The translations under genes were made by a program, and so were the position numbers. From IMG/VR virus record IMGVR_UViG_3300044957_000763, positions 124,001 through 188,000 of that record: DNA of 64,000 nt. One strand, written 5' to 3'. Numbering within the stretch: position 1 is the first letter of the stretch; every line of letters begins with the position of its first letter. The notes beneath the pieces were generated by a model, which saw only the letters and a program-made list of their open reading frames with translations, did not search any database and was not told the DNA's origin. Shown here piece after piece: positions 27,652 through 44,042 of this stretch.

Positions 27652-27654
27652 AGA

Positions 27655-29197: not shown

Positions 29198-29200
29198 ATT

Positions 29201-29275: not shown

Positions 29276-29282
29276 GGTTTGT

Positions 29283-29358: not shown

Positions 29359-29363
29359 GAATT

Positions 29364-29684
29364 TCATGCAACATGTTTGTCTCCAGCTACGCTGGCAGAC
29401 TTATAAACAACCAGTGTGCAATCAGTGATTGCTTCGAAGTCTGATTCTTCATATGGTTCAATAACCATGATGTCGCCGGCGTTCAAGACGTAATCGCCCA
29501 TGCGACATTCTCCAGAGATTATCAACGTCACCTCAGTGCTGCACTTGTGGTAGTGCATGGCGTTTGTTTCGCCAGCCTTGTAAGATTTGACACCGACTTC
29601 TGCGGTTGTGGTTTTGAAAACACAAGGTTCAAAATTTCCTACGAACCACCCTCCTTTCATTGAGTTGTGCTGGAATATGCGCAT
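29364..29684 (-). CDS. Cupin-domain protein
   Basis: MHYHK..TEVTLIISG..GD cupin motifs. Confidence 0.8.
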   Translation of the reverse strand: MRIFQHNSMKGGWFVGNFEPCVFKTTTAEVGVKSYKAGETNAMHYHKCSTEVTLIISGECRMGDYVLNAGDIMVIEPYEESDFEAITDCTLVVYKSASVAGDKHVA

Positions 29685-29758
29685 GTTTAGTTTGTACAGG
29701 CGCTATAGCCATTAATATGGTTGTTGATTTCATCGGTGAGTTTGGTCTATAATAAGTA

Positions 29759-30010
29759 ATGGACAAAGAGATTCAACTAATACCATTGCCCGATGATTTT
29801 GAAGGAAGAGTCGAGACAGGCCCAGTGCAATTTGGAGACGATTGGCCAGGGGTTTTTATTCGAGGCGACAGTGCGGCATACTATGCGGCGTCCATTCGTG
29901 CTATTTTGGAAAAATATGGCGAACAGATGCATAGGATAATGGAAATAGTACCATTGGTTGGTTTGATGGAAGATTTGGGCAGTTCCAATTTGATTAATCG
30001 ACAGCAATGA
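29759..30010 (+). CDS. Hypothetical protein
   Basis: 83-aa ORF (RVETGPVQFGDDWPGVFIRGD). Confidence 0.65.
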   Translation: MDKEIQLIPLPDDFEGRVETGPVQFGDDWPGVFIRGDSAAYYAASIRAILEKYGEQMHRIMEIVPLVGLMEDLGSSNLINRQQ

Positions 30011-30051
30011 AGACGCTTCTTGGCTGTGCTCTGTGATTTCAAGAACAAGAT

Positions 30052-30126
30052 GCCCCGGTAGTTTAGCGGTCAGAATGTTGGATTCTCAATCCAGCGAGCG
30101 GAGTTCGAGTCTCCGTCGGGGTACCA
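30052..30126 (+). tRNA. tRNA-Glu(CTC)
   Basis: GCCCCGG/TCGGGGT-ACCA; loop TT-CTC-AA. Confidence 0.9.
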
Positions 30127-30142
30127 TTTTTGCAATGTATTC

Positions 30143-30218
30143 GCTCTCCGAGCACGGTTGGTTGTGCGCTGCCATGACACGGCAGAGGTCGTGAGTTCGA
30201 ACCTCACGGAGAGCACCA
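30143..30218 (+). tRNA. tRNA-Val(GAC)
   Basis: GCTCTCC/GGAGAGC-ACCA; loop AT-GAC-AC. Confidence 0.9.
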
Positions 30219-30247
30219 TTTTCAAATCTAAGTGGTATAATAACCAC

Positions 30248-30574
30248 ATGAATACGGTAACTGATTCTAGTTTTGGTAAAGAGGTCGAAGAAGCCTCAGA
30301 TGAACAAGTTGTCATAGTCAACTTTTCTGCTTCTTGGTGTGGTCCGTGCAAGGCAATGAGGCCGCAGGTTGAGGCTATTGAGGCAAAATCCACTGGTGCA
30401 AAATTCGTATATTGTGACATTGATGACGCACCTATGCAAACAGAAAAGTTTGGTGTTTTAGGTGTGCCAACATATGTCGTGATGCGCAACCGCAAAGAAC
30501 ACGCAAGATTCGCAGGCTCAGGCCCACAAGTGTTAAGTGGCATTCAAGAATCAATTGAAAAGTTTTCGGTTTAG
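30248..30574 (+). CDS. trxA: Thioredoxin
   Basis: FSASWCGPCK active site; cis-Pro GVPT. Confidence 0.93.
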   Translation: MNTVTDSSFGKEVEEASDEQVVIVNFSASWCGPCKAMRPQVEAIEAKSTGAKFVYCDIDDAPMQTEKFGVLGVPTYVVMRNRKEHARFAGSGPQVLSGIQESIEKFSV

Positions 30575-30575
30575 T

Positions 30576-30648
30576 ACCGGCGGTTCTGGGCCAGAGACTT
30601 CAAGCTCATATCTTGAAGGAATGGGTTCGATTCCCTTCGCCGGTACCA
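30576..30648 (+). tRNA. tRNA-Met(CAT)
   Basis: ACCGGCG/CGCCGGT-ACCA; TCAAG-CTCATAT-CTTGA. Confidence 0.75.
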
Positions 30649-30671
30649 GTTTTCTCAAACATATTCAACAT

Positions 30672-30746
30672 GGCCAACTGGTGTAATGGCAGCTCGCCTC
30701 TATCACACGGAGAAGGTTCTGGGTTCGATTCCCAGGTTGGCCACCA
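30672..30746 (+). tRNA. tRNA-Val(CAC)
   Basis: GGCCAAC/GTTGGCC-ACCA; loop AT-CAC-AC. Confidence 0.82.
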
Positions 30747-30790
30747 AATTTACAGACCTGGGTTTACCCAGTGTTTTGATAGCAGAATGT

Positions 30791-31180
30791 TTAACAATCT
30801 TGCGGCCACTGAATATCGTAATCATCCGACTCTACTAGCTCTTCAGTAGACAATTTCACTCCTCCCCACTCAAGGTCTGCGGGTGATATGTAGTACATCC
30901 CCGGTATGTAATCAGCATATCCAACGTATTGATTTTGATGATATACCATGACGTTGCTTTCGTCTGCGGTGCGATATTCAAAGTAGAAAACCTTGTCTGG
31001 CCAGTCACCAGAGAACCTGTATTTTTGGTCATCGGGAATCGTAAGTTTGTTGTGTTCTATGTGTTCGTCTGTAAATTCAATATAGGCACCTCGTTGACCA
31101 ATTACAAGACGTCTATAACCAACGGCTACGAGTGTGCCGCTGTGTGTTTTGAATTCAATCGGAGTACTTCTCGAGTTCAT
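30791..31180 (-). CDS. Hypothetical protein
   Basis: 129-aa ORF. Confidence 0.65.
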   Translation of the reverse strand: MNSRSTPIEFKTHSGTLVAVGYRRLVIGQRGAYIEFTDEHIEHNKLTIPDDQKYRFSGDWPDKVFYFEYRTADESNVMVYHQNQYVGYADYIPGMYYISPADLEWGGVKLSTEELVESDDYDIQWPQDC

Positions 31181-31937
31181 ATCCTGCTACAAACGCATTC
31201 ATCAATTCATCCAAAAGATGTTTTGTGTCCGTGAGTCCAATTTTACCTTCGATTCTTGCGAATAGTTGATTTGCGTATGAGTTTGCAAAGTGCGTATCGA
31301 ATTGCTCCTCGAGCCATTCTGTTTCTTCTTCGCTTCGTGGCGTAATGCTTCGAAGAAATGATTCTGAATCTTTTGGCAATGAGTCAAATGAAAACTTGGC
31401 TACAATAGAGCAAGGGAAGAATTGCTCCTCAATTGGTTTTCCGTGTCTGTGTTCATCAAGTTTGGTTTTGTCAAATGTGTATCTGCTTTCTTCTCCAGGT
31501 CGACCTTGGTTGAATCCTTCGTACACTTCTAAGATTTTTTCGTCAAGGTTGATGATATACGCATATTCACAAAACAAAGAATCATAAATGAAATCGTTGT
31601 TTACGAGCATATACCCGCATATAAGCATTTCCTTGAGGTCACCCTGTAGACCTCTTGTCAAGCAATACCAATCTTCTTCTGATTGCTCTCCTACTCCATT
31701 GTGTGTATACGGCTTTAGTGCCTGTATGTCTTCGGCTGTTGGTTTGGGGCCGTCAATGCTGACAGTCTTGACATCATTAAGCATCTTTCTCACCCACTTA
31801 ATGCCGGGGTATTTTATAAGCGACCTGGTCAATTCAAGTGCTTCAACACCCAAAGATTCTGGATAACTGTCGCAATGGTTATATGTCAAGTAATCTTGAC
31901 CATTGTGTCTGAATCCGATGCTGCCTCGTGTTGACAT
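31155..31937 (-). CDS. Conserved phage hypothetical protein
   Basis: Likely start MSTRGSIG...YNHCDSYPESLG; SLFCEYAYIINLD pattern recurrent in phages. Confidence 0.7.
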   Translation of the reverse strand: MSTRGSIGFRHNGQDYLTYNHCDSYPESLGVEALELTRSLIKYPGIKWVRKMLNDVKTVSIDGPKPTAEDIQALKPYTHNGVGEQSEEDWYCLTRGLQGDLKEMLICGYMLVNNDFIYDSLFCEYAYIINLDEKILEVYEGFNQGRPGEESRYTFDKTKLDEHRHGKPIEEQFFPCSIVAKFSFDSLPKDSESFLRSITPRSEEETEWLEEQFDTHFANSYANQLFARIEGKIGLTDTKHLLDELMNAFVAGYELEKYSD

Positions 31938-31988
31938 ATATCCATTATGCCATAGGTGAGCACTGTTTGTCAACATAATCAATAAGCT

Positions 31989-32279
31989 ATGGTTTGTGTA
32001 ATTGAACTCGAGCTTGGGCAGTGTGGCGACCATCGAGCAACAGAACACGAACGTATTCAGCATAGAATCAAGGCAACTCATCAGGTTTATCACGAAATGA
32101 TGGAAGAATGCCGAATGCTTGGTGCGTCATTTCATGTTTATTCTATTTTAGACCGCCTTGGATATGTTGTTGCAGAATTGCCGGTGCATCATTGGTCATT
32201 GTTGAATTCTATGCACTGTGTAAAAGAAGTGCGCGAAAGTAAATTACACAAACGACTACGAGAATGCGATAATAACTAA
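31989..32279 (+). CDS. Hypothetical protein
   Basis: 96-aa ORF immediately upstream of the deaminase. Confidence 0.45.
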   Translation: MVCVIELELGQCGDHRATEHERIQHRIKATHQVYHEMMEECRMLGASFHVYSILDRLGYVVAELPVHHWSLLNSMHCVKEVRESKLHKRLRECDNN

Positions 32280-32280
32280 C

Positions 32281-32802
32281 ATGTCACAAAGACCAGGTTG
32301 GGATTCGCTGTTTATGTCAATGGCGATGTTGTTTTCAATGCGCAGTCCAGACACATCAACTAGGGTTGGGTGTGTTATCGCAGACCGCGACAATACTGTC
32401 ATGAGTCTTGGATACAACGGTTGGCCTCGAGGGGTTCAGTCTTTTGAACCAGGAGACGCGCGTTTTCAAAGACCAGAAAAGTATATGTGGATGGAGCACG
32501 CCGAGCGCAATGCCATCTATAATGCCTGTCGTAATGGCACACCGCTGAATCACTGCACACTGTATGCGACGCTTTTTCCGTGTGCTGATTGCGCCAGGGG
32601 TATTATTCAGGTTGGAATAGAGCGTGTAGTTTATCATGGCCCAAGCACTCAAATCATGAGGCAAATGAACCAGCAGTGGGATGCTTTTTACGGCGCGTCT
32701 ATGCGTATGTTTAATGAAGCCGGCATCGAAGTTGTGGAGTGGTTTGGAGACATTGTAATACCAGAAGGTCAATGTCAAGGTCAATCTATGCATTTTTGCT
32801 AG
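32281..32802 (+). CDS. dCMP deaminase
   Basis: SLGYNG, EHAERNAI, FPCADCA zinc motifs. Confidence 0.93.
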   Translation: MSQRPGWDSLFMSMAMLFSMRSPDTSTRVGCVIADRDNTVMSLGYNGWPRGVQSFEPGDARFQRPEKYMWMEHAERNAIYNACRNGTPLNHCTLYATLFPCADCARGIIQVGIERVVYHGPSTQIMRQMNQQWDAFYGASMRMFNEAGIEVVEWFGDIVIPEGQCQGQSMHFC

Positions 32803-32853
32803 ATTTCTTCGCATTGACCTCAAGAATCTGCACAATCATGGCAAGACCAAATT

Positions 32854-33339
32854 GTGCTGTACGCTTTATACTTTTTGCTGGTTGTGATTTCTCTGTTATT
32901 GTTTGATAACATTAAATTGCGCAGCCGCATTAGAACTGACGCGATGACTAGCGCAGTAACGCGCACGGTGTTTGAAAGCACACTAGTCCGTTGGCGAAAA
33001 TCCAAGAGTAAGTTCGCTGTTATTTACATTGACTGTGATGGGTTCAAGAGGGTCAATGATGCATATGGACACAAGGCCGGAGACCACGTGTTGTATGCAG
33101 TTGTTGAGTTTTTGAAGGAAATAGTGCGGCCATCTGACATGGTGGCAAGGTTGGGCGGCGACGAATTTGCCATACTTTTGCGCGATTGCAAAAGCGTTCA
33201 ATTGGTGGTCGAGCGTATTCAGGTGTTTAAGTACATTGGTGTGACACTTAGTTGTGGTTGGGCGACTTCTGATGAATATGACCCGCTAACTCTTGCTGAC
33301 ACGCGAATGTATGAGGCTAAACGAGCATCATATCAATAA
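32854..33339 (+). CDS. Diguanylate cyclase (GGDEF) with N-terminal TM helix
   Basis: IDCDGFKRVNDAYGHKAGD, RPSD I-site, RLGGDEF, ADTRMYEAK. Confidence 0.9.
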   Translation: MLYALYFLLVVISLLLFDNIKLRSRIRTDAMTSAVTRTVFESTLVRWRKSKSKFAVIYIDCDGFKRVNDAYGHKAGDHVLYAVVEFLKEIVRPSDMVARLGGDEFAILLRDCKSVQLVVERIQVFKYIGVTLSCGWATSDEYDPLTLADTRMYEAKRASYQ

Positions 33340-33688
33340 GACTTTCTTGGCGATTTTCTAAGTATCTCAAAAAGTATGTGACGGTTTTTCGACGACTGTA
33401 GCCGATGTGCTCCTGTGTGTCACAGATATCGAAGAAATCAGCGCCTATTTTAAGTAGACGATGTCTGTGTGGTTGGTCTCTCAATTCTGGAGTTAAATAT
33501 TCTCTGAGGTGCCAATGTATATCTTTCCATTCTGTAATTCTAGCGCGATGTGACCTGGTTAATCCCAACCTGATAATACTGATGTTTGAGTGTGAGTGAT
33601 TAAGTTCAGAATTGAATACGACCGCGTTTTTATACTTGCGATAGCGCCAATATCCGAGCTCATCTTTGGAGTATTCGCAAATGTCCAT
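33317..33688 (-). CDS. Hypothetical protein
   Basis: 123-aa ORF. Confidence 0.5.
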   Translation of the reverse strand: MDICEYSKDELGYWRYRKYKNAVVFNSELNHSHSNISIIRLGLTRSHRARITEWKDIHWHLREYLTPELRDQPHRHRLLKIGADFFDICDTQEHIGYSRRKTVTYFLRYLENRQESLIDMMLV

Positions 33689-33727
33689 GCATGAATTATA
33701 GCACGTGTGCTATAATAACCAGTAATC

Positions 33728-33803
33728 GCTCCAGTAGCTCAACGACAGAGCGGAGGTCTCTAACACCTCGACTGAGTGGGTTCAACTCCCACCTGGAGCA
33801 CCA
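33728..33803 (+). tRNA. Amber-suppressor-type tRNA (CTA)
   Basis: GCTCCAG/CTGGAGC-ACCA; GAGGT-CT-CTA-AC-ACCTC; own TGCTATAAT promoter. Confidence 0.88.
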
Positions 33804-33808
33804 AATTT

Positions 33809-34288
33809 ATGCAAGTATTCGTACCATCAACTGATATGCGCGAAAGCGTTAGAGTGTTAGATACTCTAAGATTGCGAAAGCAATTGTTAGAGTGCGTGGG
33901 GATTTTGTCGATTCTTCACAATCTTCCAAAGGCAGACGGCTCTCCGCGCAAAGGGCATCTCAATCATCCAGCAGTGCTTCAATGGAAATACTGGCCTGGT
34001 TGCTTGGCGACGTATGCCATGATGTGCGTGGAAGAACTTGAATCTCGTGGATTTTTCTCGGAAAAGATGCGTACTTCTGCCGAGGCATTTCAGACCGATG
34101 ACAACAAACCAGTTTGGTGGGGTGATGAGCAAGTTCATTCAACACATCGAAGTCGACTGCTACAAAAAGACCCTGTACACTACGGTCAATTCAATTGGGA
34201 AGAGATGAATCAAGAACCGCAGTCATATTGGTGGGCTATTCCATCGAGTAAATCTGAGTACAACTTGGAGCGCAGAGGTAAATCATGA
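33809..34288 (+). CDS. Pyrimidine-dimer glycosylase/endonuclease V-like (MSMEG_6728 family)
   Basis: MQVF...LDTLRLRKQLLE...HLNHPAVLQW...HSTHRSRLLQKDP. Confidence 0.8.
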   Translation: MQVFVPSTDMRESVRVLDTLRLRKQLLECVGILSILHNLPKADGSPRKGHLNHPAVLQWKYWPGCLATYAMMCVEELESRGFFSEKMRTSAEAFQTDDNKPVWWGDEQVHSTHRSRLLQKDPVHYGQFNWEEMNQEPQSYWWAIPSSKSEYNLERRGKS

Positions 34289-34761
34289 GGTTCATTTTCT
34301 TGGATATTGATGGTTGTCTGAATGACCGCACAATGATGTCAAATGGATTTTGTGGTATTGATGACGATAAAGTTGCGTTATTGAATCAAATTCTCTCGAA
34401 TCACGAGGATGTGTTCTTGGTGATTTCTTCTGCATGGCGATATATGTGCATAGCTAAAGATATGACTCTAAGAGGGTTTGAGGAAATGTTGTTGACCCAC
34501 GGTGTAGACTGCTACGGTCGTGTCCATGGTATTACATCTCCAGATGAGAAATATTGGCCAGACATTCCAACAAGTGACGATTATGCAGACCTTACTGTTC
34601 GCGCTCGTCAAATTGAAGAATATGTACAACAACATAACCCACAATCATTTGTGGTATTTGATGATTTGGATTTACCAGTTGACAATATAGTCAAGACTGA
34701 TGGTCAAATTGGCTTAGAGCAACACCACATATACTCAGCTCTGAACATTTTATTTCAGTAG
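34285..34761 (+). CDS. HAD-superfamily (Swiss Army Knife RNA repair-like) protein
   Basis: FLDIDGCLN, ISSAWR, VVFDD. Confidence 0.8.
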   Translation: MRFIFLDIDGCLNDRTMMSNGFCGIDDDKVALLNQILSNHEDVFLVISSAWRYMCIAKDMTLRGFEEMLLTHGVDCYGRVHGITSPDEKYWPDIPTSDDYADLTVRARQIEEYVQQHNPQSFVVFDDLDLPVDNIVKTDGQIGLEQHHIYSALNILFQ

Positions 34762-34772
34762 TTGAAGCCGTA

Positions 34773-34802
34773 TTGACAAACATTGGATTTGAGGATATAA
34801 TA
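34773..34802 (+). promoter_or_regulatory. sigma70 promoter
   Basis: TTGACA...TATAAT directly before a near-leaderless ATG. Confidence 0.7.
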
Positions 34803-35296
34803 TGAACATGCAAACCATTACCCTTTCTCGCGCACTTCAGGTCAAGAATCGCCTGGCTGAAAAAATCGCAGTTGCACAGAAGTTGGTGCAAGATTACAAC
34901 AGTAGCGTTGTAATCCCTGGACAGGCACCGGAGTTCAATGTGGCAGAGGTTTACAAACTCTATACCGAGCTACAGTATCGAATGGTCGATTTGAAAGACC
35001 GCATCAGCGAGGCAAATCGTCCTGTTCAGGCGACTATTTTCGAGCTTGCTGAGTTGAAAGGCCGCGTGCAGATGCTCAAGGGCTTGAACACGCGTAAAGG
35101 AAAGGAGTTTGCTAACTCGTATTCCATGTTTGATGACAGTGGTGAACCCAAGATGGTTGAGTACGTGGCAGTACTCGATAAGCAGTTCACTGCCGAAGAA
35201 ATTCGCGTTCTGCAGAATGAAATCGACAGTCGACAGGCTGACCTAGACCGCCACAATCATCAAACCATAATCGAATTTGATTTCGATTGGATGTAA
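34802..35296 (+). CDS. DIP1984/DUF6847-like coiled-coil protein
   Basis: ITLSRALQVKNRL...LKDRISEAN...LAELK...LQNEID..Q..LD..N pattern (recalled family resemblance). Confidence 0.6.
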   Translation: MNMQTITLSRALQVKNRLAEKIAVAQKLVQDYNSSVVIPGQAPEFNVAEVYKLYTELQYRMVDLKDRISEANRPVQATIFELAELKGRVQMLKGLNTRKGKEFANSYSMFDDSGEPKMVEYVAVLDKQFTAEEIRVLQNEIDSRQADLDRHNHQTIIEFDFDWM

Positions 35297-35317
35297 CGAT
35301 TTCGGCTTCGGTCGAAA

Positions 35318-35547
35318 CTAGGGGTGTGTAAGTGAGATGCGAGCCAGGTGCACAATCAGTGTATGTCTGGGTTCACTTCGGTGAATAGAAAACAAGTAAC
35401 CACTTGAAATGGTGACTATTATGGCAAACTTGTTCCTGACTAGGACTTTGAATGTCAAGATGCAAGGTTCAATTTAGTCAAAATACAAGGCGCAAAACGC
35501 AAGTCTTAAGAATCAACATTCACTCGGTCTTACAAACCACCCCTTAG
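35318..35547 (+). ncRNA. Structured RNA with 7-nt-periodic CAA loop
   Basis: GGGGTG-TGTAAG/CTTACA-CACCCC closing helix, UUCG hairpin, AACAAGT/ACTTGTT helix, GAATGT/ACATTC closing a repeat loop. Confidence 0.7.
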
Positions 35548-35592
35548 TATTTTGTTGAAGGTCGATTTTACACTTGTGTCGAACTGTTAATT

Positions 35593-36327
35593 ATGAGTTC
35601 GAAATACACACATCGACACGATGAAATTGTTCACTTGTGTAAAAACGCATTTACATTTTCAGAAGTCGAGCAACAGCTTGGTACATCAACACCAAACACC
35701 TCGCTTCGGAGATATATTAAGTTTCATAGCATACCAATGCCAAATTATTGCAGAGTTCGCGACGTTGATGATAATTTAGTAAAATATTATCAACCTATAC
35801 GAATTGAAGATTTGATAAATGGCATACGATTGTCAACGCATGCTGTAAAGAAATTTCTTTTTAAGAACGGTATCAAATCTCAAGAGTGTGAGATTTGCGG
35901 TTGGTGTGAACGACGTGCATCAAATGGAAAAATTCCAGTACACTTACATCACATTAACGGGAACCCATTTGATTGGACGATTGAAAATTTGCAGATTTTG
36001 TGCCCTAATCATCATGCACTCACTGATAATTTTGGTTCTCTGAATACAGGAAAAGGTTACATATTTGCAAATCGCCCAGCTACAACCAGGGCCCGCTTAG
36101 AGCACGAAACTAGCAATGCTTGTTTGTATTGCGCTTCTGCTTGTTCTTATAAGTCTAAATTTTGTTCTAGAGAGTGTCTATATATGAGTCAGCAAAAATG
36201 CATTAGACCAACTAAGGAACAATTAAAAGATGAGATAGCTAATAGCAACTGGATGGCTATTGGTCGCAAATATGGAGTGTCAGACAATGCTGTAAGAAAA
36301 TGGGCCAAGAAATATGGCATAATATAA
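35593..36327 (+). CDS. HNH endonuclease with C-terminal HTH
   Basis: CEICG...LHHINGN..D...NLQILCPNHH; AIGRKYGVSDNAVRKW. Confidence 0.88.
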   Translation: MSSKYTHRHDEIVHLCKNAFTFSEVEQQLGTSTPNTSLRRYIKFHSIPMPNYCRVRDVDDNLVKYYQPIRIEDLINGIRLSTHAVKKFLFKNGIKSQECEICGWCERRASNGKIPVHLHHINGNPFDWTIENLQILCPNHHALTDNFGSLNTGKGYIFANRPATTRARLEHETSNACLYCASACSYKSKFCSRECLYMSQQKCIRPTKEQLKDEIANSNWMAIGRKYGVSDNAVRKWAKKYGII

Positions 36328-36329
36328 TT

Positions 36330-36411
36330 GCCCCGTGGTTTGACGCTTGAGGCTTGAGCGATTGGTCCCTAAAACCAACAACAAAGGGTTCAACTCCCTC
36401 TCGGGGCGCCA
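36330..36411 (+). tRNA. Second, non-canonical tRNA with CTA anticodon
   Basis: TTGGT-CC-CTA-AA-ACCAA (C33 instead of U33); 6-bp acceptor; 14-nt D-loop; GCCA end. Confidence 0.55.
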
Positions 36412-36465
36412 ATTCTCTCACAAACTACAAGGTTCATTGTCTTCTGCTGTGTAAAAAAGACATAG

Positions 36466-38544
36466 ATGTCGAAGCAGATGAATAGTGAGATACTGAACGC
36501 CTTGCTAAAGGCTGCAAACGCTGCTGAACAGGCTGGCGACTTTCGTCTTGCAGACAGTGCTGACGAGTTGGCACAACGTGTGGCACAACTTTCTACTGCG
36601 GTTCAATTTGGCAAAACAGTTGCCAAGCCTGCGTTAACATATCTTGGTAACGACCAGGTTATTTTACCAACAGTTAAAGGACTCACAAACGCCACTGAAG
36701 GAAAGGCATTAGGAGAGGGTGTTTTAGAAAGTACGCCCGTCAATATGCTCGGAATCGGCGGCGGAGACTATTTCGGTTCATTAACAGACCCTCTTAATTG
36801 GGGACCAGACGCGGTCATGGCGCTCAACAAAATGAGGTTTATGAATATGTTGCGTTCGCAATTGATTAGTGCCGGGTATACCGAATTAGCAAATGACAAT
36901 GTGTGGAGAGTTTTTAAGAATATCCCCGGAGGACAAGGTGGTCTTGAGGACTTGTTGCGGGAGGCAGACCCTAAAGCTGCTGCTAAGTTTCTTGGAGAGC
37001 AAAAGGCAACTCCGAGGGGGCTTGCTGATTTCTTTACGCGTTTTCGCGAACGAGCAAGAGCGAACAAGGGCACTCATTGGGCTAGATTCAAGGCGCGGTA
37101 TATTACAAGTGCGGGCTGGGGAGGCAGTGCCAATCTATCTGCAGAAAGAGCGGAGCGTGTTAGGAATTTTATCAACAGCAAGATGACAGATGCAGATAAA
37201 GCATTAAGTACTGAAGAGTTGATTAAGAAGTATCGTCGAAATGTTGATGATGTTGAAGGCTTCGACAGAAGTAAAGTCAAAACCAAAGCACCTAAGACTC
37301 CAAAACCTAATGCAATTAAGGGCGCAAATTCTGTAATAAGCAAAGCATCGTCAGCGAAAGACCTGGTACAAAAAGCCGGTCAATATTTGAAAGAAAGACC
37401 GGAGCTGATAAAGCAGGCACTTTCCAAAGCCGGTAAAACCGAAGAAGGCGTTCAGTGGCTTAAGTTCTTAAAATCCAACAGCAAAGACGCCACTAAAGTT
37501 GGCAAGGGCATGAAGGCGCTCGGTCGAATTGCCATGGTTATAGCCATTGCAGATATTATTAGCGATGTCCCAGGTGCCGTTGCAGGAGACGCACAGGCAC
37601 AACTTGATATTTACATTAACACTCTTGGCCTGGCTTTTCCACCTCTTGCCATTGCCACAGCATTGACAAGTTTGTTTGGGCTTGATTTATCTGAAATGAT
37701 TATTGCTAATGTTACGCATTTGGGCGAGGTTGCATCAGGTGTTGACACAGCACAAACCAACGAAGACCTTATCAATGCTGGTATGACCTACAATCCGCAA
37801 ACCAAAGAGTGGGAAAATGGTGGTGTAGAACGCTCATATGACACTAATACTGGCAAATCATTCGAGGCTGGGATGATGAATATGGTTAAGTCTGGTATGA
37901 GTATTAATCAGGCATGGTTGATTACGTTAAGAAAAATGAAGGCTTCTGGTTCTACACCAGAAGAAATTCTTACGGCGCGACAAAAATACAACCAAGCCAA
38001 AACTATGATTTACAATGAGGGAATGATTGGCTCAATAAAAGCACCTATGTGGAGCGAAAGCCAAATCGCTGAATTTGAAAAGTCTTTGAACAAGCACATT
38101 GTCGCCAAGCTGAATGCTGGAGTTGCACAAGCAGAACTATTGCGCGAGATTGATTCTTACATGCGCAAGGTTCCAAATCTTCGTATGATAAGTGCTATTC
38201 GTTCTAGAGTTGTTGGCAATCTTAACGCAGCGCAAAAAAGCATTGAGAAGGGTGAAAAACCAATTACACCACAGGGTCAGCAAAATACAACTACCAAAGA
38301 AAAGGTAAATAACACATTGATGTCACGAGCACAACGTTCTCGAGGTCCTCGTGTCGCAATTTGGCAAAAATTCTTGGCTCAAAATGGTTTCTTCCCTGGA
38401 TACAATCAAAACACACCAGCGGTCTTTGGTCCTCGAACAACACGCGGTACTCGCGCTTTTCAGTCAAGATACAATTTGAGGGTAGATGGAGCGGCCGGCC
38501 CAGAGACGCTTGCGAAAGCGAGGCAACTGGGTGGTAAACTATAG
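36466..38544 (+). CDS. Large putative virion protein with C-terminal peptidoglycan-binding domain
   Basis: PG_binding_1 pattern RGPRVAIWQ..L...FGPRT...AFQ...LRVDG.AGPET; N-terminal LLKAANAAE.AG...AD..D helix. Confidence 0.7.
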   Translation: MSKQMNSEILNALLKAANAAEQAGDFRLADSADELAQRVAQLSTAVQFGKTVAKPALTYLGNDQVILPTVKGLTNATEGKALGEGVLESTPVNMLGIGGGDYFGSLTDPLNWGPDAVMALNKMRFMNMLRSQLISAGYTELANDNVWRVFKNIPGGQGGLEDLLREADPKAAAKFLGEQKATPRGLADFFTRFRERARANKGTHWARFKARYITSAGWGGSANLSAERAERVRNFINSKMTDADKALSTEELIKKYRRNVDDVEGFDRSKVKTKAPKTPKPNAIKGANSVISKASSAKDLVQKAGQYLKERPELIKQALSKAGKTEEGVQWLKFLKSNSKDATKVGKGMKALGRIAMVIAIADIISDVPGAVAGDAQAQLDIYINTLGLAFPPLAIATALTSLFGLDLSEMIIANVTHLGEVASGVDTAQTNEDLINAGMTYNPQTKEWENGGVERSYDTNTGKSFEAGMMNMVKSGMSINQAWLITLRKMKASGSTPEEILTARQKYNQAKTMIYNEGMIGSIKAPMWSESQIAEFEKSLNKHIVAKLNAGVAQAELLREIDSYMRKVPNLRMISAIRSRVVGNLNAAQKSIEKGEKPITPQGQQNTTTKEKVNNTLMSRAQRSRGPRVAIWQKFLAQNGFFPGYNQNTPAVFGPRTTRGTRAFQSRYNLRVDGAAGPETLAKARQLGGKL

Positions 38545-38577
38545 TTGTTGCTTGAATTAGCAACGGATTGACATGCA

Positions 38578-41500
38578 ATGTGGTACAGAACTATTGTAGC
38601 TGCAAGAAACGGCGTATATGTTTCAGAATTGAATTTACCAATCAATGAAACACTGCACGCAATTCTTGAGGATTTGAGGTCACAAGGATTTAAGGCCTTG
38701 GTGGTCGGCGGTGCTGTGCGAGACGCGGTGATGGGTGTGGTGCCCAAAGACATTGATGTTGAGGTTTATGGAGCAGACTATGACACTTTACACACAACAC
38801 TCACCAAATACGGTCGCGCCGACGTAGTTGGTAAAAGTTTTGGTGTGTTGAAGTTGCGCACGCCCGATGGTCAAGATTATGACTTTAGCGTTCCTCGGCG
38901 TGACAGTAAAACAGGAGATGGGCATACAGGGTTTAAAATTACTGTAGACCATACAATGACACCAGAGCAAGCGGCAGCCCGCCGCGATTTCACCATGAAT
39001 TGTTTTTCTGGAGAAACGAAAATATTGACCAAATCAGGACCGAAATCATTAATGGAATTATGTGGTCAACAATGTGAGGTGTTAGACGGAAACGGTGAGT
39101 GGACACACGCAGATGTTAGGTCGTTTGGTGTTCAAAAATTGTTAAAATTGACTGTTACCAGAAATAGAATTGTCAAAACGATTTATGCAACTCCAAATCA
39201 CAGATGGTTTATCAAGAATAAACACACATATGTTTTTGACCGCGAAAGAACGACTGAGAATTTGCGGTGCGGTCACATGCTTCCGTCTGTGTATCCAATT
39301 ATTCAATCTACACAATTAGACAATGAGTCTATTTGTAGGGGGTTTGTATTTGGTGACGGCAACATTGTTGTTTTTGACAGCGGGAATGCGGTGAGCATTG
39401 CTAATTTTTGCGGTGAAAAAGACTCACATTTATTACCTTTATTTGAAAAACTGGACATGGGTCGACCCCCTCATGATATCCCATCGGGCAAGCGCATCTC
39501 TTCTCTTCCGCCAAATTGGAAGTTAGAAACTCCAGAATTTTCTGAATCATATGAATATCTACTTGGGTGGTTGTCTGGTTATTTTGCCGCTGATGGTTGT
39601 GTAGACTCTAAGGGATGTCCTGTGTTGAGTTCTTGCAATAGGGAAAATCTTGAATATGTAGAGCAACTTTGCAGATGTGTTGGTATCGGTACATATCAAA
39701 TCAGTCAATGTAAAATTGGTTCTGGGTACAATTCAAAAAGTGAATGTTGGTCTTTGGGCTTTGTGCGCAAAACTTTGTTTTCTGATTTTTTTATTATTCC
39801 AGAGCACAGAAAAAGATTTAACTCTGCAACCAATAGTCGGAATCGAACTGCATGGAAGGTTGTTAGTGTTGATGATTCAGATAGGATTGAAGAGGTTTAT
39901 TGTGCTGTAGTGCCGACCACTCATACATTTTGCCTAGATGGCAATTTGTTGACATCAAATTGTCTTGCGTATGACCCGTTGACGTCTGAGATACATGACT
40001 ACTATGGTGGAATTGAGGACTTGGAGAACGGTGTGTTGCGCGCCACCACAGAGGCATTTAAGGAAGACCCTTTGCGTGTATTGCGCGGCATGCAATTCGC
40101 TGCCAGATACGGTATGCGTCTAGACCCTGACACTGCAAAGATGTGCAGGGAAATAGTCGATGCGCATGACGAGTTGGCAACTGAGCGCATTGCAGAAGAA
40201 TGGATGAAACTTGCCATTAAGGGAAAACAACCAGGAACCGCACTCGAATACTTGGCAGACACTGGATGGCTAAAGCATTATCCAGAGCTTGAGGCCATGT
40301 TCGATGTGCCCCAAGACCCAGAATGGCACCCGGAAGGCTGGGAGCACTTCGATGCACCAGAACACAAAAGAAACCTATATACCAAAGAAGACCAAAATGT
40401 ATCTCACTGGCAAGACGTTATTGGTTTTCGGGGCGACGCACCAAGCGGTAGTAAAATGGTCTCGACACCTTATAAGTCCACAAATCCAGAACGCCAGCAT
40501 GAGAACAGCCCAGAACCACACATTTATGTCACTATGGATGTTCCTATTGACAGCTATTGGAGATATGTGTACGAACAAGACAGAATTGATGCCAAACCTA
40601 TAGCCAACCTTGCTGTTAGACACTTAATGTCTCAATATGGTGGTGCCGAACTTAATGGCAAGACCCACTATCGTATGATTGGTTCATTGAAAGCCAGTCC
40701 AGCAGTGTATTGTCATGCCGAACGACAAGGTGACCATGTTGAATTGACCGTTGGGCTTCATAGTGAGTTGTCTAAGGAGTTGTTAGACCGTGGATGCCCA
40801 CTTCATGTTTATGTGAAAATGGGCGATGTAGCCACGCATACTGCACACGTGATGGATGCAGCCGCTGCAGTTGCAGAGCGAGACGGACTGATTGGTGATG
40901 ACAGGGCAACATTAGTACTTGCCGCTATGGTGCATGATATTGCCAAGCCACAGACCACAGAAATCCAGCAACGCGCCGGCAGGGGTATGTCTGTAACTTC
41001 GATTGGTCACGAAAAGGCCGGAGAACCAATTGCTGTAGACCTACTCAAAAGAATGGGCATTAAGAAGTCAATCAGGGATAAGGTTGGTCCAATGGTGGCA
41101 CGTCATTTGGCGCATGTTACCACGACCCCAACTAAGTCTAATGTGCGCAAGCTGGCTCGTGATATCGCACCAGCCAGCATTGAAGAACTTGCCAAGTTGA
41201 TTGAGGCCGACCATTCTGGTAGGCCACCATTGCCACAAGAGTTACCTCGTCAAGCCCAGGATATGTTGGATATTGCTAGAAAAGACGGTGTAGCCAACGG
41301 CAAGCCCGCACCAATTGTGCAAGGCAAGCATGTTCTGCCATATTACGGTGGCGCGTCAGGGAAACATATTGGTGAAGCGGTACAGGAAGCATATCGTGCA
41401 TACTTAAATGGTGCCTATGACAACTTTGAAGGTGGACAACAGTGGTTGAGCAATTATTTACAGTCTCGAGCCTCTATGCTTAGAGGTTCAGATGTTATAG

Positions 41501-41646
41501 CACTTGGTGTTAAACCCGGTCCAGTGATTGGTCAAATACTCAACGAGGCATGGCAAATGCAGATTGTGGGCACGTTCACGAGTCGTGAGGATGCTCTTGC
41601 TTGGCTGTCGAATCGAGTGAATTCTGACGCCACGTTAACGCAGTAG
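38578..41646 (+). CDS. cca: CCA-adding tRNA nucleotidyltransferase with HD domain, intein and extra insertion
   Basis: VGGAVRD, DIDVE, RRDFTMN, EDPLRVLR, ERIAEEW, PQDPEWHPEG, VHDIAK. Confidence 0.9.
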   Translation: MWYRTIVAARNGVYVSELNLPINETLHAILEDLRSQGFKALVVGGAVRDAVMGVVPKDIDVEVYGADYDTLHTTLTKYGRADVVGKSFGVLKLRTPDGQDYDFSVPRRDSKTGDGHTGFKITVDHTMTPEQAAARRDFTMNCFSGETKILTKSGPKSLMELCGQQCEVLDGNGEWTHADVRSFGVQKLLKLTVTRNRIVKTIYATPNHRWFIKNKHTYVFDRERTTENLRCGHMLPSVYPIIQSTQLDNESICRGFVFGDGNIVVFDSGNAVSIANFCGEKDSHLLPLFEKLDMGRPPHDIPSGKRISSLPPNWKLETPEFSESYEYLLGWLSGYFAADGCVDSKGCPVLSSCNRENLEYVEQLCRCVGIGTYQISQCKIGSGYNSKSECWSLGFVRKTLFSDFFIIPEHRKRFNSATNSRNRTAWKVVSVDDSDRIEEVYCAVVPTTHTFCLDGNLLTSNCLAYDPLTSEIHDYYGGIEDLENGVLRATTEAFKEDPLRVLRGMQFAARYGMRLDPDTAKMCREIVDAHDELATERIAEEWMKLAIKGKQPGTALEYLADTGWLKHYPELEAMFDVPQDPEWHPEGWEHFDAPEHKRNLYTKEDQNVSHWQDVIGFRGDAPSGSKMVSTPYKSTNPERQHENSPEPHIYVTMDVPIDSYWRYVYEQDRIDAKPIANLAVRHLMSQYGGAELNGKTHYRMIGSLKASPAVYCHAERQGDHVELTVGLHSELSKELLDRGCPLHVYVKMGDVATHTAHVMDAAAAVAERDGLIGDDRATLVLAAMVHDIAKPQTTEIQQRAGRGMSVTSIGHEKAGEPIAVDLLKRMGIKKSIRDKVGPMVARHLAHVTTTPTKSNVRKLARDIAPASIEELAKLIEADHSGRPPLPQELPRQAQDMLDIARKDGVANGKPAPIVQGKHVLPYYGGASGKHIGEAVQEAYRAYLNGAYDNFEGGQQWLSNYLQSRASMLRGSDVIALGVKPGPVIGQILNEAWQMQIVGTFTSREDALAWLSNRVNSDATLTQ
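39001..39960 (+). mobile_element. Intein (320 aa) with LAGLIDADG homing endonuclease
   Basis: Begins CFSGET, block B TPNHRW, GFVFGDG and GYFAADG, ends VYCAVV...LLTSN; +1 residue Cys. Confidence 0.92.
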
Positions 41647-41845
41647 CGCCGGCCCAAATTACCTGCAAGACCACTACTGAATATAATTGGTGGAACCACG
41701 CGTCTACTGCAATCATTATTGGTCCAACAATGTTGCACATTTCATAAAATGTGCTTTCTTGTTTGATTTTTCCAGCACGCATGGCAACATAGCTACCGAC
41801 AACAATAAATATTCCTGCCCAACCAAGTACATCAAGTAAATTCAT
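41576..41845 (-). CDS. Small three-helix membrane protein (CBU_0592-like)
   Basis: LGWAG...SY...NIVG...LQVIW hydrophobic pattern. Confidence 0.6.
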   Translation of the reverse strand: MNLLDVLGWAGIFIVVGSYVAMRAGKIKQESTFYEMCNIVGPIMIAVDAWFHQLYSVVVLQVIWAGATALTWRQNSLDSTAKQEHPHDS

Positions 41846-41858
41846 CTATTTATTATGT

Positions 41859-42266
41859 CTATTTGAACTTGATTGATAAGTCAATGCGGCCGGCAACTCC
41901 ATCTTCTCGAGGTGTGCCGTTTACTGAAAACACAGACATGTTCAGATTGAAGTTTGGTCTTGAAAACTGGTATCCAAAACCGTATTTTGAAATCATATTT
42001 GCATTCAGTTCATGACCGCGTGAAAGGTCGTAGTTCATGTTAAGCCCAGGCAAAATACGTATGCCGGTGCCGGCACTGAATCCGCGTAAGTTCCAGTTGT
42101 TTTGTTCGCTAAGTCGAGTTGATGCACGGAGAGTAAACGCATCTTTATATGATGCGTTGTAGTTGATGTCCAGGGTGTTGTCCTTGAATCCTTGGGCCAT
42201 GATTGTACACGTAACGAGTGCTGTGATGATAGTCGCTATAAGTTTCATGTTATTTTTATACCGCAC
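41859..42266 (-). CDS. Secreted beta-rich protein
   Basis: Signal peptide; alternating beta pattern; C-terminal Phe/Lys. Confidence 0.5.
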   Translation of the reverse strand: MRYKNNMKLIATIITALVTCTIMAQGFKDNTLDINYNASYKDAFTLRASTRLSEQNNWNLRGFSAGTGIRILPGLNMNYDLSRGHELNANMISKYGFGYQFSRPNFNLNMSVFSVNGTPREDGVAGRIDLSIKFK

Positions 42267-42298
42267 GCATTGTTGGAATTCATGGTATAATCACGAAT

Positions 42299-42628
42299 GT
42301 GAGTCAAAAAAATAGAATCACTGACTTGGTTGGTACGTTGGATTTCTTTGATTTCGTAACACCGATTGAACCAGCACCGCCATCGCATGATGAGCTTGAG
42401 TCGATATCTAACAATATGGGCATTCAGTGCGCTGCTGCAGTAGTAGAAGACTACTTGTCTTTGTCTGCTAATAGATATGCCTCATGTGGAATTCGTGCCG
42501 GGTGTGTTCTGAAGCTAAAAGACGGTGGTTATCTACTTGTAGGCCACGTTAGCGAGCGCCTTGGCTACATAGATGACGCTCCATTCATAGAATTACACGA
42601 AATCGAGGCTATTGCCTATTTGTATTGA
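42299..42628 (+). CDS. Hypothetical protein
   Basis: ORF after a TGGTATAAT box. Confidence 0.55.
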   Translation: MSQKNRITDLVGTLDFFDFVTPIEPAPPSHDELESISNNMGIQCAAAVVEDYLSLSANRYASCGIRAGCVLKLKDGGYLLVGHVSERLGYIDDAPFIELHEIEAIAYLY

Positions 42629-42637
42629 GGTTACAAA

Positions 42638-42925
42638 ATGCCTGAAGATGTTCCTATTCCAAACTGCAATGATATTCTGGATATGATTATAGCAGTTACT
42701 GCCAAAAACGACACTGAAGCCAATCGTTATCATGATGGCGAAATGTCAAGCGAGTTATATTTGCAAACTTGCCTTGCGCACATGTCTGAGATTACATGGA
42801 TTGTAAGCTGTAATCATTTGTCATCTGGAGACATGAGGTTGATTGATTTTTGGACTCGGCACCGTAATTTTGCCAAATGGAACCTGGTTAAGCCTCGCCC
42901 TGATGGCTATGAATTTTTGGCTTGA
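42638..42925 (+). CDS. Hypothetical protein
   Basis: 95-aa ORF with GAGG SD. Confidence 0.55.
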   Translation: MPEDVPIPNCNDILDMIIAVTAKNDTEANRYHDGEMSSELYLQTCLAHMSEITWIVSCNHLSSGDMRLIDFWTRHRNFAKWNLVKPRPDGYEFLA

Positions 42926-43487
42926 ACTCAGACAAGCTGGCATTAGGATTGAATAGACCAATTTGTTGATTCCGCATGCTTACAATCGCTTGGGCTTTAT
43001 CAATGGTGGTCATCCAGTGGTATTCTGGCGACAAGAAACAACGTTCGACATCAGCGCGAATTCCAAGCCAAACACCAGGCTCTAAGATTTTGATTTGCCC
43101 CTCTTCTGCCATGATAACACATTTCGCCGCGGCAAATGCATCTTGTGCAATATGAGCAATCGACCTTGGGCCTGGGTCTACACCTGTGGTCATGAATTCG
43201 CTGTATCTATTTAGGTCTGATTTAGAACCAGGCTCGTCTTTCTCGCAACTTATCCAACCATGTTCAGTCCATACGACAAACCACCCTTTCTCTGCCGCCT
43301 CAAGTGAACCAGGCCAATAACCAGTCCAAGCCGCTTTGTCCCAATCATGCTCATCGCATTGGCACAACATATATTGCCCAAAGCACTTTGTGCAGATTTG
43401 AACATCACAGTCTTCTTGATGTCTTTCGCCAGGACTGACGCCGCAATCCGGGCATATTGTTTCAGCCCGTAAACCTTCCATACTCAT
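42888..43487 (-). CDS. Hypothetical Cys-rich protein
   Basis: CPDCG...H..DCD...CTKC N-terminal metal-binding pattern. Confidence 0.6.
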   Translation of the reverse strand: MSMEGLRAETICPDCGVSPGERHQEDCDVQICTKCFGQYMLCQCDEHDWDKAAWTGYWPGSLEAAEKGWFVVWTEHGWISCEKDEPGSKSDLNRYSEFMTTGVDPGPRSIAHIAQDAFAAAKCVIMAEEGQIKILEPGVWLGIRADVERCFLSPEYHWMTTIDKAQAIVSMRNQQIGLFNPNASLSEFKPKIHSHQGEA

Positions 43488-43802
43488 AATATACCACAAT
43501 GTGCCATAATAGGCGCAGGCCTGATGAACAAGCAATTTTACTAGTGTTTTGAACTTGTGTTGAGATTTTTCGAGAAAATTGACGCAGGTGGGAACATTTT
43601 CGACGCAGAATAGGTATAATACGACCAGCGGAGCAAATCTGCATCGAGATTAACATGAGCATTCGACTTAAGCGCAATAAACGCAACTACTAGGTATCCC
43701 AGTCTTTCGACAGGGGTGCCTTGCAGTCCTGTCGTTTATACCGAGTCGAATTATCTCCAATTCCCAACTCCATTCAGCGGCAGGAATGCGCATTCGCATT
43801 AT

Positions 43803-43879
43803 CCGTCGCTAGCTCAATGGTTAGTAGCAATTCCCTCTTAAGGAAAAGGTTCTGGGTTCAAGTCCCAGGCGACGGACCA
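43803..43879 (+). tRNA. tRNA-Lys(CTT)
   Basis: CCGTCGC/GCGACGG-ACCA; loop CT-CTT-AA. Confidence 0.88.
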
Positions 43880-43883
43880 ATAC

Positions 43884-43955
43884 CCCTCCGTGGCGCAAAG
43901 GCAGCGCAGGTGACTTTTAATTACTTGGTTACAGGTTCGAATCCTGTCGGGGGGA
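43884..43955 (+). tRNA. tRNA-Lys(TTT), no encoded CCA
   Basis: CCCTCCG/CGGGGGG-A; loop CT-TTT-AA. Confidence 0.85.
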
Positions 43956-43963
43956 CACAATTT

Positions 43964-44042
43964 GGCGGCTTAACTCAGTTGGGTCAAGAGTACTCGGCTT
44001 TTAACCGAGGGGTCGTGGGGTCCCAGTCCACAGTCGCCACCA
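43964..44042 (+). tRNA. tRNA-Lys(TTT), atypical T-loop
   Basis: GGCGGCT/AGTCGCC-ACCA; CTCGG-CTTTTAA-CCGAG; T-loop lacks TTC. Confidence 0.75.

What the first reader, a model, noticed from the sequence alone, without database searches (positions are those of the whole stretch)
40339..40824. Unexplained 162-aa in-frame insertion in the HD domain of the CCA enzyme
Seen: the usual PQDPEWHPEG-DVxxHT motif is split by 486 nt (WEHFDAPEH...VYVKMG), with GGC at both junctions. It has no N-terminal C/S, no C-terminal HN/N and no stop codon. Inference: this could be a new inserted domain, a non-canonical self-removing protein element, or an intron that happens to be open. It sits next to a metal-ligand His, where an unremoved insert could disable the phosphatase.
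Basis: partly seen in the sequence, partly recalled or inferred. Interest (0 to 1): 0.6.

Follow-up and report, generated by a model that had tools for sequence, protein, structure and literature searches.

The report
Orphan domain inside phage CCA enzyme
A huge lake-water phage's tRNA CCA-adding/repair enzyme carries a real, conserved, well-folded 162-residue domain of unknown fold spliced into a loop at its phosphatase active site; the evidence indicates that it stays in the protein rather than being an intron or a self-removing element.

Summary
ORF 38578-41646 (+) encodes a 1022-aa class-II CCA-adding enzyme with an HD phosphoesterase domain. About 75 relatives have an unbroken WHPEGDVxxHT motif. 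Here 486 nt (162 codons, no stop) separate G587 from D750.

The insert is neither an intron nor an intein:
- Substitutions against relatives fall mainly on third codon positions, and dN/dS is 0.046, as low as in the catalytic domains.
- It is present at the same junction in every member of a well-supported clade of 10 phage enzymes. A 100-aa core version occurs in two more.
- It has no splicing residues, no Rfam match and no HINT fold.
- The true intein in the same gene (residues 142-461) behaves differently: it is sporadic and has low GC.

AlphaFold2 folds the insert alone at pLDDT 93. It has no Pfam, PHROG, NCBIfam, PDB, BFVD or ESM-Atlas match. In 1.84 billion representative proteins it occurs only in these CCA enzymes. 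All HD catalytic residues remain invariant, so the phosphatase is probably intact.

Most likely the insert is an accessory binding or gating module at the HD active-site entrance; that function is inferred, not shown.

Side finding: in sister lineages the same codon junction holds a sporadic 669-nt cassette. Its antisense strand encodes an HNH endonuclease while its sense frame is kept open.

The parts
38578..41646 (+). Gene for a class-II CCA-adding / tRNA-repair enzyme with a C-terminal HD phosphoesterase domain (1022 aa precursor, TAG stop at 41644-41646)
   Evidence: ORF and translation. Pfam PolyA_pol, PolyA_pol_RNAbd and HD. phrog_2244 at 1.9e-61. Best NCBIfam match of the intein-free homologue is NF008137, multifunctional CCA addition/repair protein.
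38578..39000 (+). N-extein: nucleotidyltransferase head domain, residues 1-141
   Evidence: Pfam PolyA_pol 41-144; alignment A1.
39001..39960 (+). Canonical intein with a LAGLIDADG endonuclease domain, residues C142-N461, +1 residue C462. It is not the finding, but it serves as the internal contrast.
   Evidence: Pfam LAGLIDADG_3 and a weak Intein_splicing match. Absent from 8 of 9 close relatives and present only in P0004. GC 0.389 and GC3 0.316 against 0.47-0.51 in the exteins.
39961..40338 (+). Neck/body region, residues 462-587, ending in the conserved PQDPEWHPEG motif (WHPEG = 40324-40338)
   Evidence: Pfam PolyA_pol_RNAbd 512-573. Q579, W583, H584, P585 and E586 are invariant in 121 sequences.
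40339..40824 (+). THE INSERT: 162-aa orphan domain (W588-G749), sense-coded and retained in the protein
   Evidence: Present at the same junction in 12 relatives. dN/dS 0.046; differences by codon position [8, 5, 49]. AF2 pLDDT 93.2. No family or fold match. In 1.84e9 proteins it hits only CCA enzymes.
40339..40503 (+). N-terminal elaboration of the insert (insert residues 1-55). It is variable in length and missing in the short forms P0011 and P0018.
   Evidence: Alignments A2 and A4. The profile match of P0013 and P0018 starts at position 56, and that of P0011 at 42.
40504..40824 (+). Conserved core of the insert (insert residues 56-162), with secondary-structure order strand-helix-helix-hairpins-helix-strand. 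Invariant across all 12 members: P69, L96, G131, G152 and G162, plus W1 at the N-terminal junction.
   Evidence: AF2 secondary structure; alignment A4; local hmmsearch.
40825..41223 (+). HD phosphoesterase core, residues 750-882 (D750-V-A-T-H754; H786-D787; K790; H811-E812; H843; D878; R882)
   Evidence: Pfam HD 751-850. These residues are invariant in insert-bearing and insert-free relatives.
41224..41643 (+). C-terminal tail, residues 883-1022
   Evidence: Weak Pfam tRNA_NucTran2_2 match at 968-1007; conserved in A1.

Best explanation
The 486 nt encode a lineage-specific protein domain. It is translated and kept in the mature enzyme as an excursion from the loop between the WHPEG motif and the helix that carries the first HD metal-ligand histidine. 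It was acquired once, or at most a few times, in an ancestor of a small clade of huge-phage CCA-adding/repair enzymes, and has since been inherited vertically with the gene under purifying selection as strong as that on the catalytic domains. It folds on its own into a compact alpha/beta module with no recognisable relative. Its conserved ~105-residue core has a strand-helix-helix-hairpin-helix-strand order reminiscent of ferredoxin-like/RRM-like folds. The HD active site is intact and the residues invariant across the whole insert family are structural (W, P, L, G), so the domain is probably not catalytic. Inference: it acts as an accessory module at the mouth of the phosphoesterase site, recognising or gating the damaged tRNA 3' end, or docking a partner protein. 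Shown: the insert is real, sense-coded, constrained, folded, clade-fixed and an orphan. Inferred: its retention in the mature protein, its position over the active site, and its role.
For: All 9 relatives found with residues 560-790 carry the insert at the same junction, while only one shares the intein. P0013 and P0018 add two more members. On a tree built without the insert columns, the ten 140-162-aa forms are one clade with 100% SH-aLRT support. A single clade of all 12 carriers is not rejected (AU p = 0.137). Against the closest relative, the insert has pS 0.48, pN 0.034 and dN/dS 0.046, versus 0.03-0.06 in the head, body and HD regions. Differences by codon position are [8, 5, 49], [20, 9, 74], [42, 26, 91] and [35, 25, 96] in four comparisons. 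AF2 on the insert alone with 10 sequences gives mean pLDDT 93.2 and pTM 0.88, with no residue below 50. As a control, the sense peptide of the unrelated 223-aa insert at the same site gives pLDDT 50. HD residues are invariant in carriers. Identical DNA occurs in contigs of several lake-water metagenome runs without any deletion joint. The phage carries 26 tRNA genes and a tmRNA in this window. 23 of the 26 tRNA genes encode CCA, which fits a repair role for the enzyme. CCA-adding enzymes are described as RNA-repair equipment of jumbo phages (PMC7824862).
Confidence: 0.75

Rival explanations
1. Tolerated passenger. The insert is the domesticated or frozen remnant of a mobile in-frame insertion at a homing hotspot. 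It is kept only because it must fold without disturbing the HD domain, and it has no function of its own.
For: The same codon junction holds a mobile antisense HNH cassette in sister lineages. Both insert types begin G-W and end with a hydrophobic strand followed by G. The residues invariant across all type-A members are structural only. GC3 of the insert (0.389) lies between the intein (0.316) and the exteins (0.43-0.52).
Against: dN/dS of 0.046 equals that of the catalytic domains. The domain is retained without loss in a clade whose members have diverged to 32-43% identity within the insert. The antisense strand of 9 type-A inserts with DNA in hand has no HNH remnant (best E 0.06 in a tiny database; antisense frames mostly full of stops). 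hhalign probability between the two insert types is 0.04%.
Confidence: 0.15
2. Non-canonical intein or other self-excising protein element that is removed after translation.
For: It interrupts a highly conserved catalytic motif, as inteins typically do, and the same gene already hosts a true intein.
Against: There is no Cys/Ser/Thr at position 1 or +1 and no terminal Asn/Gln. No Pfam intein or HINT match is found on the insert, although the real intein was detected in the same scan. No HINT or other fold match is found. It is fixed in the clade, whereas the real intein is sporadic. No copy occurs in any other host protein among 1.84e9 representatives.
Confidence: 0.03
3. Group I or group II intron, or another RNA-level intervening sequence, that happens to be open in frame.
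For: Phage genes do carry group I introns in conserved motifs (general knowledge). The length is a multiple of three and there are no stops.
Against: There is no Rfam match at E <= 1 in 38000-42500. The substitution pattern is that of a translated sequence. Indels among relatives are all in frame. The encoded peptide folds at pLDDT 93.
Confidence: 0.02
4. Assembly chimera or artefact.
For: The window comes from a metagenome-assembled virus record.
Against: The same sequence lies in contigs of at least four runs, one of which spans the whole gene in a single 42-kb contig without differences. Homologous inserts occur in independent assemblies from ENA, Logan, JGI and NCBI.
Confidence: 0.01

Closest known systems
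Bacterial multifunctional CCA addition/repair protein (E. coli Cca type; NCBIfam NF008137; PolyA_pol head + HD domain)
   Same: Same domain order: head, neck/body, then an HD domain with the WHPE...D-x-x-x-H-T and H-D motifs. It has the same presumed job of rebuilding and healing tRNA 3' ends. The 2',3'-cyclic phosphodiesterase and phosphatase activities of the E. coli HD domain are stated from my own knowledge of the literature, not tested here.
   Different: The phage protein scores 174 bits against an equivalog cut-off of 451. It has an extra ~140-aa C-terminal tail, an intein in the head domain, and the 162-aa domain inserted in the HD loop. That domain is absent from about 75 relatives and from every other protein searched.
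Inteins (for example the LAGLIDADG intein at residues 142-461 of the same protein)
   Same: An in-frame interruption of a conserved catalytic motif with no stop codons.
   Different: It has no nucleophiles, no terminal Asn and no HINT fold. It is vertically inherited and fixed rather than sporadic, and its GC is close to that of the host gene.
Insertion domains in loops of catalytic folds (for example the CP1 editing domain inserted in the Rossmann fold of class I aminoacyl-tRNA synthetases; from general knowledge)
   Same: An autonomous folded module whose N and C termini lie together, emerging from a loop of a catalytic domain of a tRNA-handling enzyme and kept under selection.
   Different: CP1 has a known fold and activity and is ancient and widespread. 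This domain is confined to a handful of huge-phage enzymes and has no recognisable fold or catalytic residues.
Ferredoxin-like / RRM-like alpha-beta folds (Cas6, Rpb7 N-terminal domain, and the cap-binding eIF4E fold as weaker matches)
   Same: The order of secondary-structure elements in the core (strand, helix, strands, helix, strand). The top structural rows are mostly RNA-handling proteins.
In-frame insertions carrying endonuclease ORFs, such as the cox2 insertion with an HNH-like nuclease and antiparallel overlapping ORFs in Campsomeris wasps (PMC5374615)
   Same: This is relevant to the type-B cassette at the same junction in sister phages: a host gene enlarged in frame by an element that encodes an HNH-type nuclease, with overlapping ORFs on both strands.
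   Different: The window's own insert has no endonuclease ORF on either strand. In the wasp case the host gene is split into two genes rather than read through.

Membership tests
Class-II CCA-adding enzyme with HD domain (multifunctional CCA addition/repair protein) | Pol-beta-type nucleotidyltransferase head domain (Pfam PolyA_pol) | tested here: met
   PF01743 at 4.7e-16, 59.7 bits against a cut-off of 23, in two stretches split by the intein.
Class-II CCA-adding enzyme with HD domain (multifunctional CCA addition/repair protein) | HD phosphoesterase domain with H...HD...D metal ligands | tested here: met
   PF01966 at 37.8 bits against a cut-off of 22. H754, H786-D787 and D878 are invariant.
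Class-II CCA-adding enzyme with HD domain (multifunctional CCA addition/repair protein) | Score above the NCBIfam equivalog cut-off (same function as E. coli Cca) | tested here: not met
   NF008137 scores 174.2 bits against a cut-off of 451 for the intein-free homologue P0003. It is a homologue, not an equivalog.
Class-II CCA-adding enzyme with HD domain (multifunctional CCA addition/repair protein) | CCA addition and 2',3'-cyclic phosphodiesterase/phosphatase activity | not testable with these tools
   Needs enzyme assays.
Intein (for the 162-aa insert) | Cys/Ser/Thr (or Ala) at position 1 and Cys/Ser/Thr at +1 | tested here: not met
   The insert starts with W588 (or G587) and the next residue after it is D750 (or G749).
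Intein (for the 162-aa insert) | C-terminal Asn (usually His-Asn) and a HINT fold | tested here: not met
   The insert ends K-M-G. Pfam gives no hit on it. No HINT chain appears among the structural matches.
Intein (for the 162-aa insert) | Sporadic presence/absence among close relatives of the host gene | tested here: not met
   Present in all members of the clade. No deletion joints appear in metagenome contigs.
Group I / group II intron | Ribozyme core recognisable by covariance model | tested here: not met
   No Rfam match at E <= 1 apart from two chance snoRNA rows.
Group I / group II intron | Evolves as RNA, without codon periodicity | tested here: not met
   Third positions carry 49 of 62 differences against the closest relative, and dN/dS is 0.046.
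Ferredoxin-like / RRM-like fold | Significant structural superposition on a member | tested here: inconclusive
Antisense HNH homing-endonuclease cassette (the 'type B' insert of sister lineages) | [quoted passage not shown] | tested here: not met
   Antisense frames of the window's insert hold 4, 10 and 8 stops, and no HNH similarity is found (best E 0.06 in a tiny database).

The most novel reading that the evidence does not exclude
The codon junction between WHPEG and DVxxHT is a homing hotspot in huge-phage CCA genes. Endonuclease cassettes land there in frame and are translated through as part of the enzyme. The window's folded 162-aa domain would be a domesticated descendant of such an insertion, that is, a new protein domain born from a mobile element in an active-site loop. 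The data do not exclude this: the junction is identical, both insert types share a G-W start and a strand-G end, and the predicted secondary-structure order is similar. There is no positive evidence of homology (hhalign 0.04%, no HNH remnant).
Probability: 0.12. Interest if true: 0.8.

Novelty: new variant of a known kind. Interest (0 to 1): 0.5.

Why it matters
CCA-adding/repair enzymes are part of the tRNA-repair equipment with which large phages counter host tRNA damage. A new, strongly conserved domain placed at the entrance of the HD phosphoesterase site suggests a lineage-specific change in what the healing activity recognises or how it is controlled. This can be tested directly with a deletion variant.

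The domain is also an orphan that AlphaFold2 predicts with high confidence, has no detectable structural relative and is found in only about a dozen proteins among billions. That makes it a compact target for structural work and for studying how new domains arise.

The contrast with a sporadic antisense-HNH cassette at exactly the same codon junction gives a natural system for asking whether in-frame mobile insertions can be tolerated, read through and eventually domesticated.

Tried and rejected
- **Intron:** Rfam at permissive threshold on 38000-42500 gave only two chance snoRNA rows. Rejected.
- **Free-standing or other-host copies:**
  - The word search with the insert alone found none.
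  - The viral-contig scan found none.
  - The phage's own genome holds only the one copy.
  - ESM-Atlas features gave no usable hit.
  - The PDB sequence profile search gave E 0.14 at best.
  - The profile search of 1.84e9 representatives found only three CCA enzymes.
- **Close phage records:** megablast against the phage collection found no match. tblastn of the homologue finds only head/body similarity at <60% identity, never the insert.
- **RNA evidence:** no RNA run holds the locus. Contigs laid on the gene show no joints, which is uninformative about splicing.
- **Homology between the 162-aa and 223-aa inserts:** hhalign probability is 0.04%. Not supported.
- **HNH remnants on the antisense strand of type-A inserts:** none.
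- **Not done:**
  - No alternative genetic code was invoked.

Full report
**Setting.** The window is bases 124001-188000 of a 478,840-bp virus record with direct terminal repeats, that is, a complete huge phage. The same DNA occurs in several lake-water metagenome runs. The window holds 26 tRNA genes and a tmRNA. 23 of the 26 tRNA genes encode their 3' CCA.

**The gene.** ORF 38578..41646 (+) encodes 1022 aa. Pfam finds the PolyA_pol head, PolyA_pol_RNAbd and HD domains, plus a LAGLIDADG_3 match. The best PHROG is tRNA nucleotidyltransferase at 1.9e-61. The best NCBIfam model for the intein-free homologue is the multifunctional CCA addition/repair protein, but it scores below the equivalog cut-off.

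- Residues W588-G749 correspond exactly to 40339-40824: 162 codons with no stop.
- GGC sits on both sides, at 40336-40338 and 40822-40824. This only shifts the boundary by one Gly codon.
- Of 120 relatives fetched, about 75 have WHPEG directly followed by D-V-x-x-H-T. The family motif is therefore really split here.
- The junction residues (W or G first, G or M last, D750 next) exclude the usual intein chemistry.

**An internal contrast.** The same protein contains a true intein (C142-N461, +1 C462; DNA 39001-39960). It has a LAGLIDADG domain. It is absent from 8 of 9 close relatives. Its GC is 0.389 and GC3 0.316, against 0.47-0.51 in the exteins. This is how a mobile element looks in this gene.

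**Distribution of the insert.**
- A word search with residues 560-790 found nine relatives of 680-1037 aa. Every one carries the insert at the same junction.
- A search with the head/body of the intein-free homologue P0003 added P0013 (142-aa insert) and P0018 (102 aa), along with many insert-free enzymes at 51-63% identity.
- The conserved part is the C-terminal ~105 residues. The N-terminal ~55 residues vary in length and are missing in P0011 and P0018.
- On a tree made without the insert and intein columns, the ten 140-162-aa carriers form one clade (100% SH-aLRT). The two short-form carriers form another.
- Holding all twelve together costs 20.4 log-likelihood units and is not rejected (AU p = 0.137). 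One origin is possible but not shown.
- Gene order around the enzyme is conserved among carriers, with a ~700-aa PG_binding_1 protein upstream.

**The insert is translated sequence under selection.**
- Against the closest relative it has pS 0.479, pN 0.034 and dN/dS 0.046. The other regions give 0.033 (head), 0.033 (body) and 0.063 (HD and tail).
- Differences by codon position are [8, 5, 49], [20, 9, 74], [42, 26, 91] and [35, 25, 96] in four comparisons.
- All length differences among relatives are in frame.
- No Rfam family matches.
- An intron, or a segment that merely happens to be open, does not fit these data.

**It folds, and the fold is not recognisable.**
- AlphaFold2 on the insert alone with ten sequences gives mean pLDDT 93.2 and pTM 0.88. 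The core runs strand 62-69, helices 70-79 and 86-100, hairpins 112-140, helix 143-150 and strand 156-160.
- Foldseek against PDB gives nothing better than E 0.16. BFVD gives 0.035.
- The ESM-Atlas shape search stays at TM <= 0.40.
- The element order recalls ferredoxin-like/RRM-like folds, but membership cannot be claimed.

**It is an orphan.**
- A profile of the ten inserts searched against 1.84 billion representative proteins found three proteins. All are CCA enzymes of this group, and one is a fragment.
- No free-standing homologue was found, no second copy in the phage and none in IMG/VR contigs.
- There were no Pfam, PHROG, NCBIfam or PDB-sequence matches and no usable ESM feature hit.
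- I found no description of it in the literature searched. Jumbo-phage CCA enzymes are discussed there only as RNA-repair enzymes (PMC7824862).

**The host domain is intact.** Q579, W583, H584, P585, E586, H754, H786, D787, K790, H811, H843, D878 and R882 are invariant in all 12 carriers, as in 109 non-carriers. The insert is therefore not a sign of a decaying phosphatase.

**Properties of the insert.** It is mildly acidic (pI 5.2-7.1) and rich in His and aromatic residues in the long forms. The residues invariant across all carriers are W1, P69, L96, G131, G152 and G162, all structural.

**Mechanism (inferred).** The domain leaves the HD fold three residues after H584 and returns four residues before H754, so its base sits at the active-site entrance. 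I propose that it is a non-catalytic accessory module that selects or gates what reaches the phosphoesterase site. The likely substrate is a damaged tRNA 3' end, given the enzyme's role and the phage's large tRNA set. Alternatively it may dock a partner. No coordinates, RNA or protein data were available to test this.

**A different element at the same junction (related loci, not the window).**
- Four relatives (P0020, P0026, P0036, P0051) carry 223-224 extra residues at exactly the same codon junction. These also start G-W and end with a hydrophobic strand plus G.
- They are scattered among insert-free sisters; P0026 is 95% identical to the insert-free P0025 outside the insert.
- In the sense frame the differences by codon position are [93, 36, 63] and dN/dS is 0.77. 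The exactly antiparallel frame has dN/dS 0.16 and encodes an HNH_3 endonuclease with zinc ribbons (29.8 and 30.9 bits against a cut-off of 24.8).
- The sense frame has no stop in any of the four protein sequences.
- In the two copies with DNA in hand, the antisense ORF uses no TTA, CTA or TCA codon, where about six would be expected per copy (P about 1e-3 each).
- The cassette has no Rfam match, and its sense peptide folds poorly (pLDDT 50).
- This looks like a mobile endonuclease gene that sits antisense in the loop while the host frame is kept open.
- It shows that the junction is an insertion hotspot and gives a possible, untested origin for the window's domain.
- No homology between the two insert types was detected (hhalign 0.04%), and no HNH remnant lies antisense to any type-A insert.
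- A loose precedent for in-frame insertions with HNH-like nuclease and antiparallel ORFs exists in wasp mitochondrial cox2 (PMC5374615).

**Limits.**
- I did not build a joined, intein-spliced version of the window's protein. The natural intein-free homologue P0003 stood in for it.
- No alternative genetic code was used.

**Verdict.** The finding is real and is best read as a new, clade-restricted insertion domain in a known enzyme, that is, a new variant of a known kind. Confidence is high that it is a retained, constrained protein domain and low to moderate about what it does.

Noticed in passing
L009:2401-3069 (P0026) and L011:2365-3033 (P0036); also in proteins P0020 and P0051; empty site in L010 (P0025): At the same WHPE|G codon junction, sister-lineage CCA genes carry a sporadic 669-nt cassette. 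Its antisense strand encodes an HNH_3 endonuclease (dN/dS 0.16), while the sense frame stays open (dN/dS 0.77). The antisense ORF has no TTA, CTA or TCA codons, where about 6 would be expected. It appears to be a mobile endonuclease gene read through in frame.
   Followed up: partly
window 39001-39960 (+): A canonical LAGLIDADG intein (C142-N461, +1 Cys; the penultimate residue is Ser rather than His) lies in the nucleotidyltransferase head domain between T-M-N and (A/C)-L-A-Y-D-P. It is present only here and in P0004 among the relatives, and has low GC (0.389).
   Followed up: partly
window 20131-20485 and 24520-44041: A tmRNA gene and 26 tRNA genes lie in the window, and 23 of the tRNA genes encode their CCA end. 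The phage's CCA enzyme is therefore more likely a repair enzyme than a maturation enzyme.
   Followed up: partly
window 33728-33803 (+): A tRNA with anticodon CTA (an amber-reading tRNA, labelled Pyl by ARAGORN). The CCA gene itself ends in TAG at 41644-41646, and relatives end at the same aligned position. Whether TAG is reassigned in this phage was not examined, and no alternative code was used.
   Followed up: no
window 35593-36327 (+): A free-standing 244-aa ORF with an HNH motif (H-L-H-H-I-N-G-N ... N-H-H) lies just upstream of the PG_binding_1 gene. It shows weak similarity to the type-B cassette's endonuclease (tblastn E 0.002). No gene of this size is called at that position in the related loci L003 and L004.
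   Followed up: no
L002 (record JAFDWS010000002.1, 1,363,254 bp, labelled Armatimonadetes MAG): The insert-bearing homologue P0010 lies on a 1.36-Mb contig binned as a bacterium, but its neighbourhood is syntenic with the phage loci (dCMP deaminase, GGDEF, HAD_SAK_2, PG_binding_1, CCA enzyme, BtpA). It could be a very large phage, a misbinned or chimeric contig, or an integrated element. This was not resolved.
   Followed up: no
proteins P0006 (residues ~85-136), P0011/P0018 (47 aa after position 215 of P0014), P0019/P0020 (68 aa after position 211), P0024/P0033/P0059/P0065 (C-terminal additions): Other lineage-specific insertions occur at several further sites of these phage CCA enzymes, so the family is unusually tolerant of added segments. 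None was characterised.
   Followed up: no
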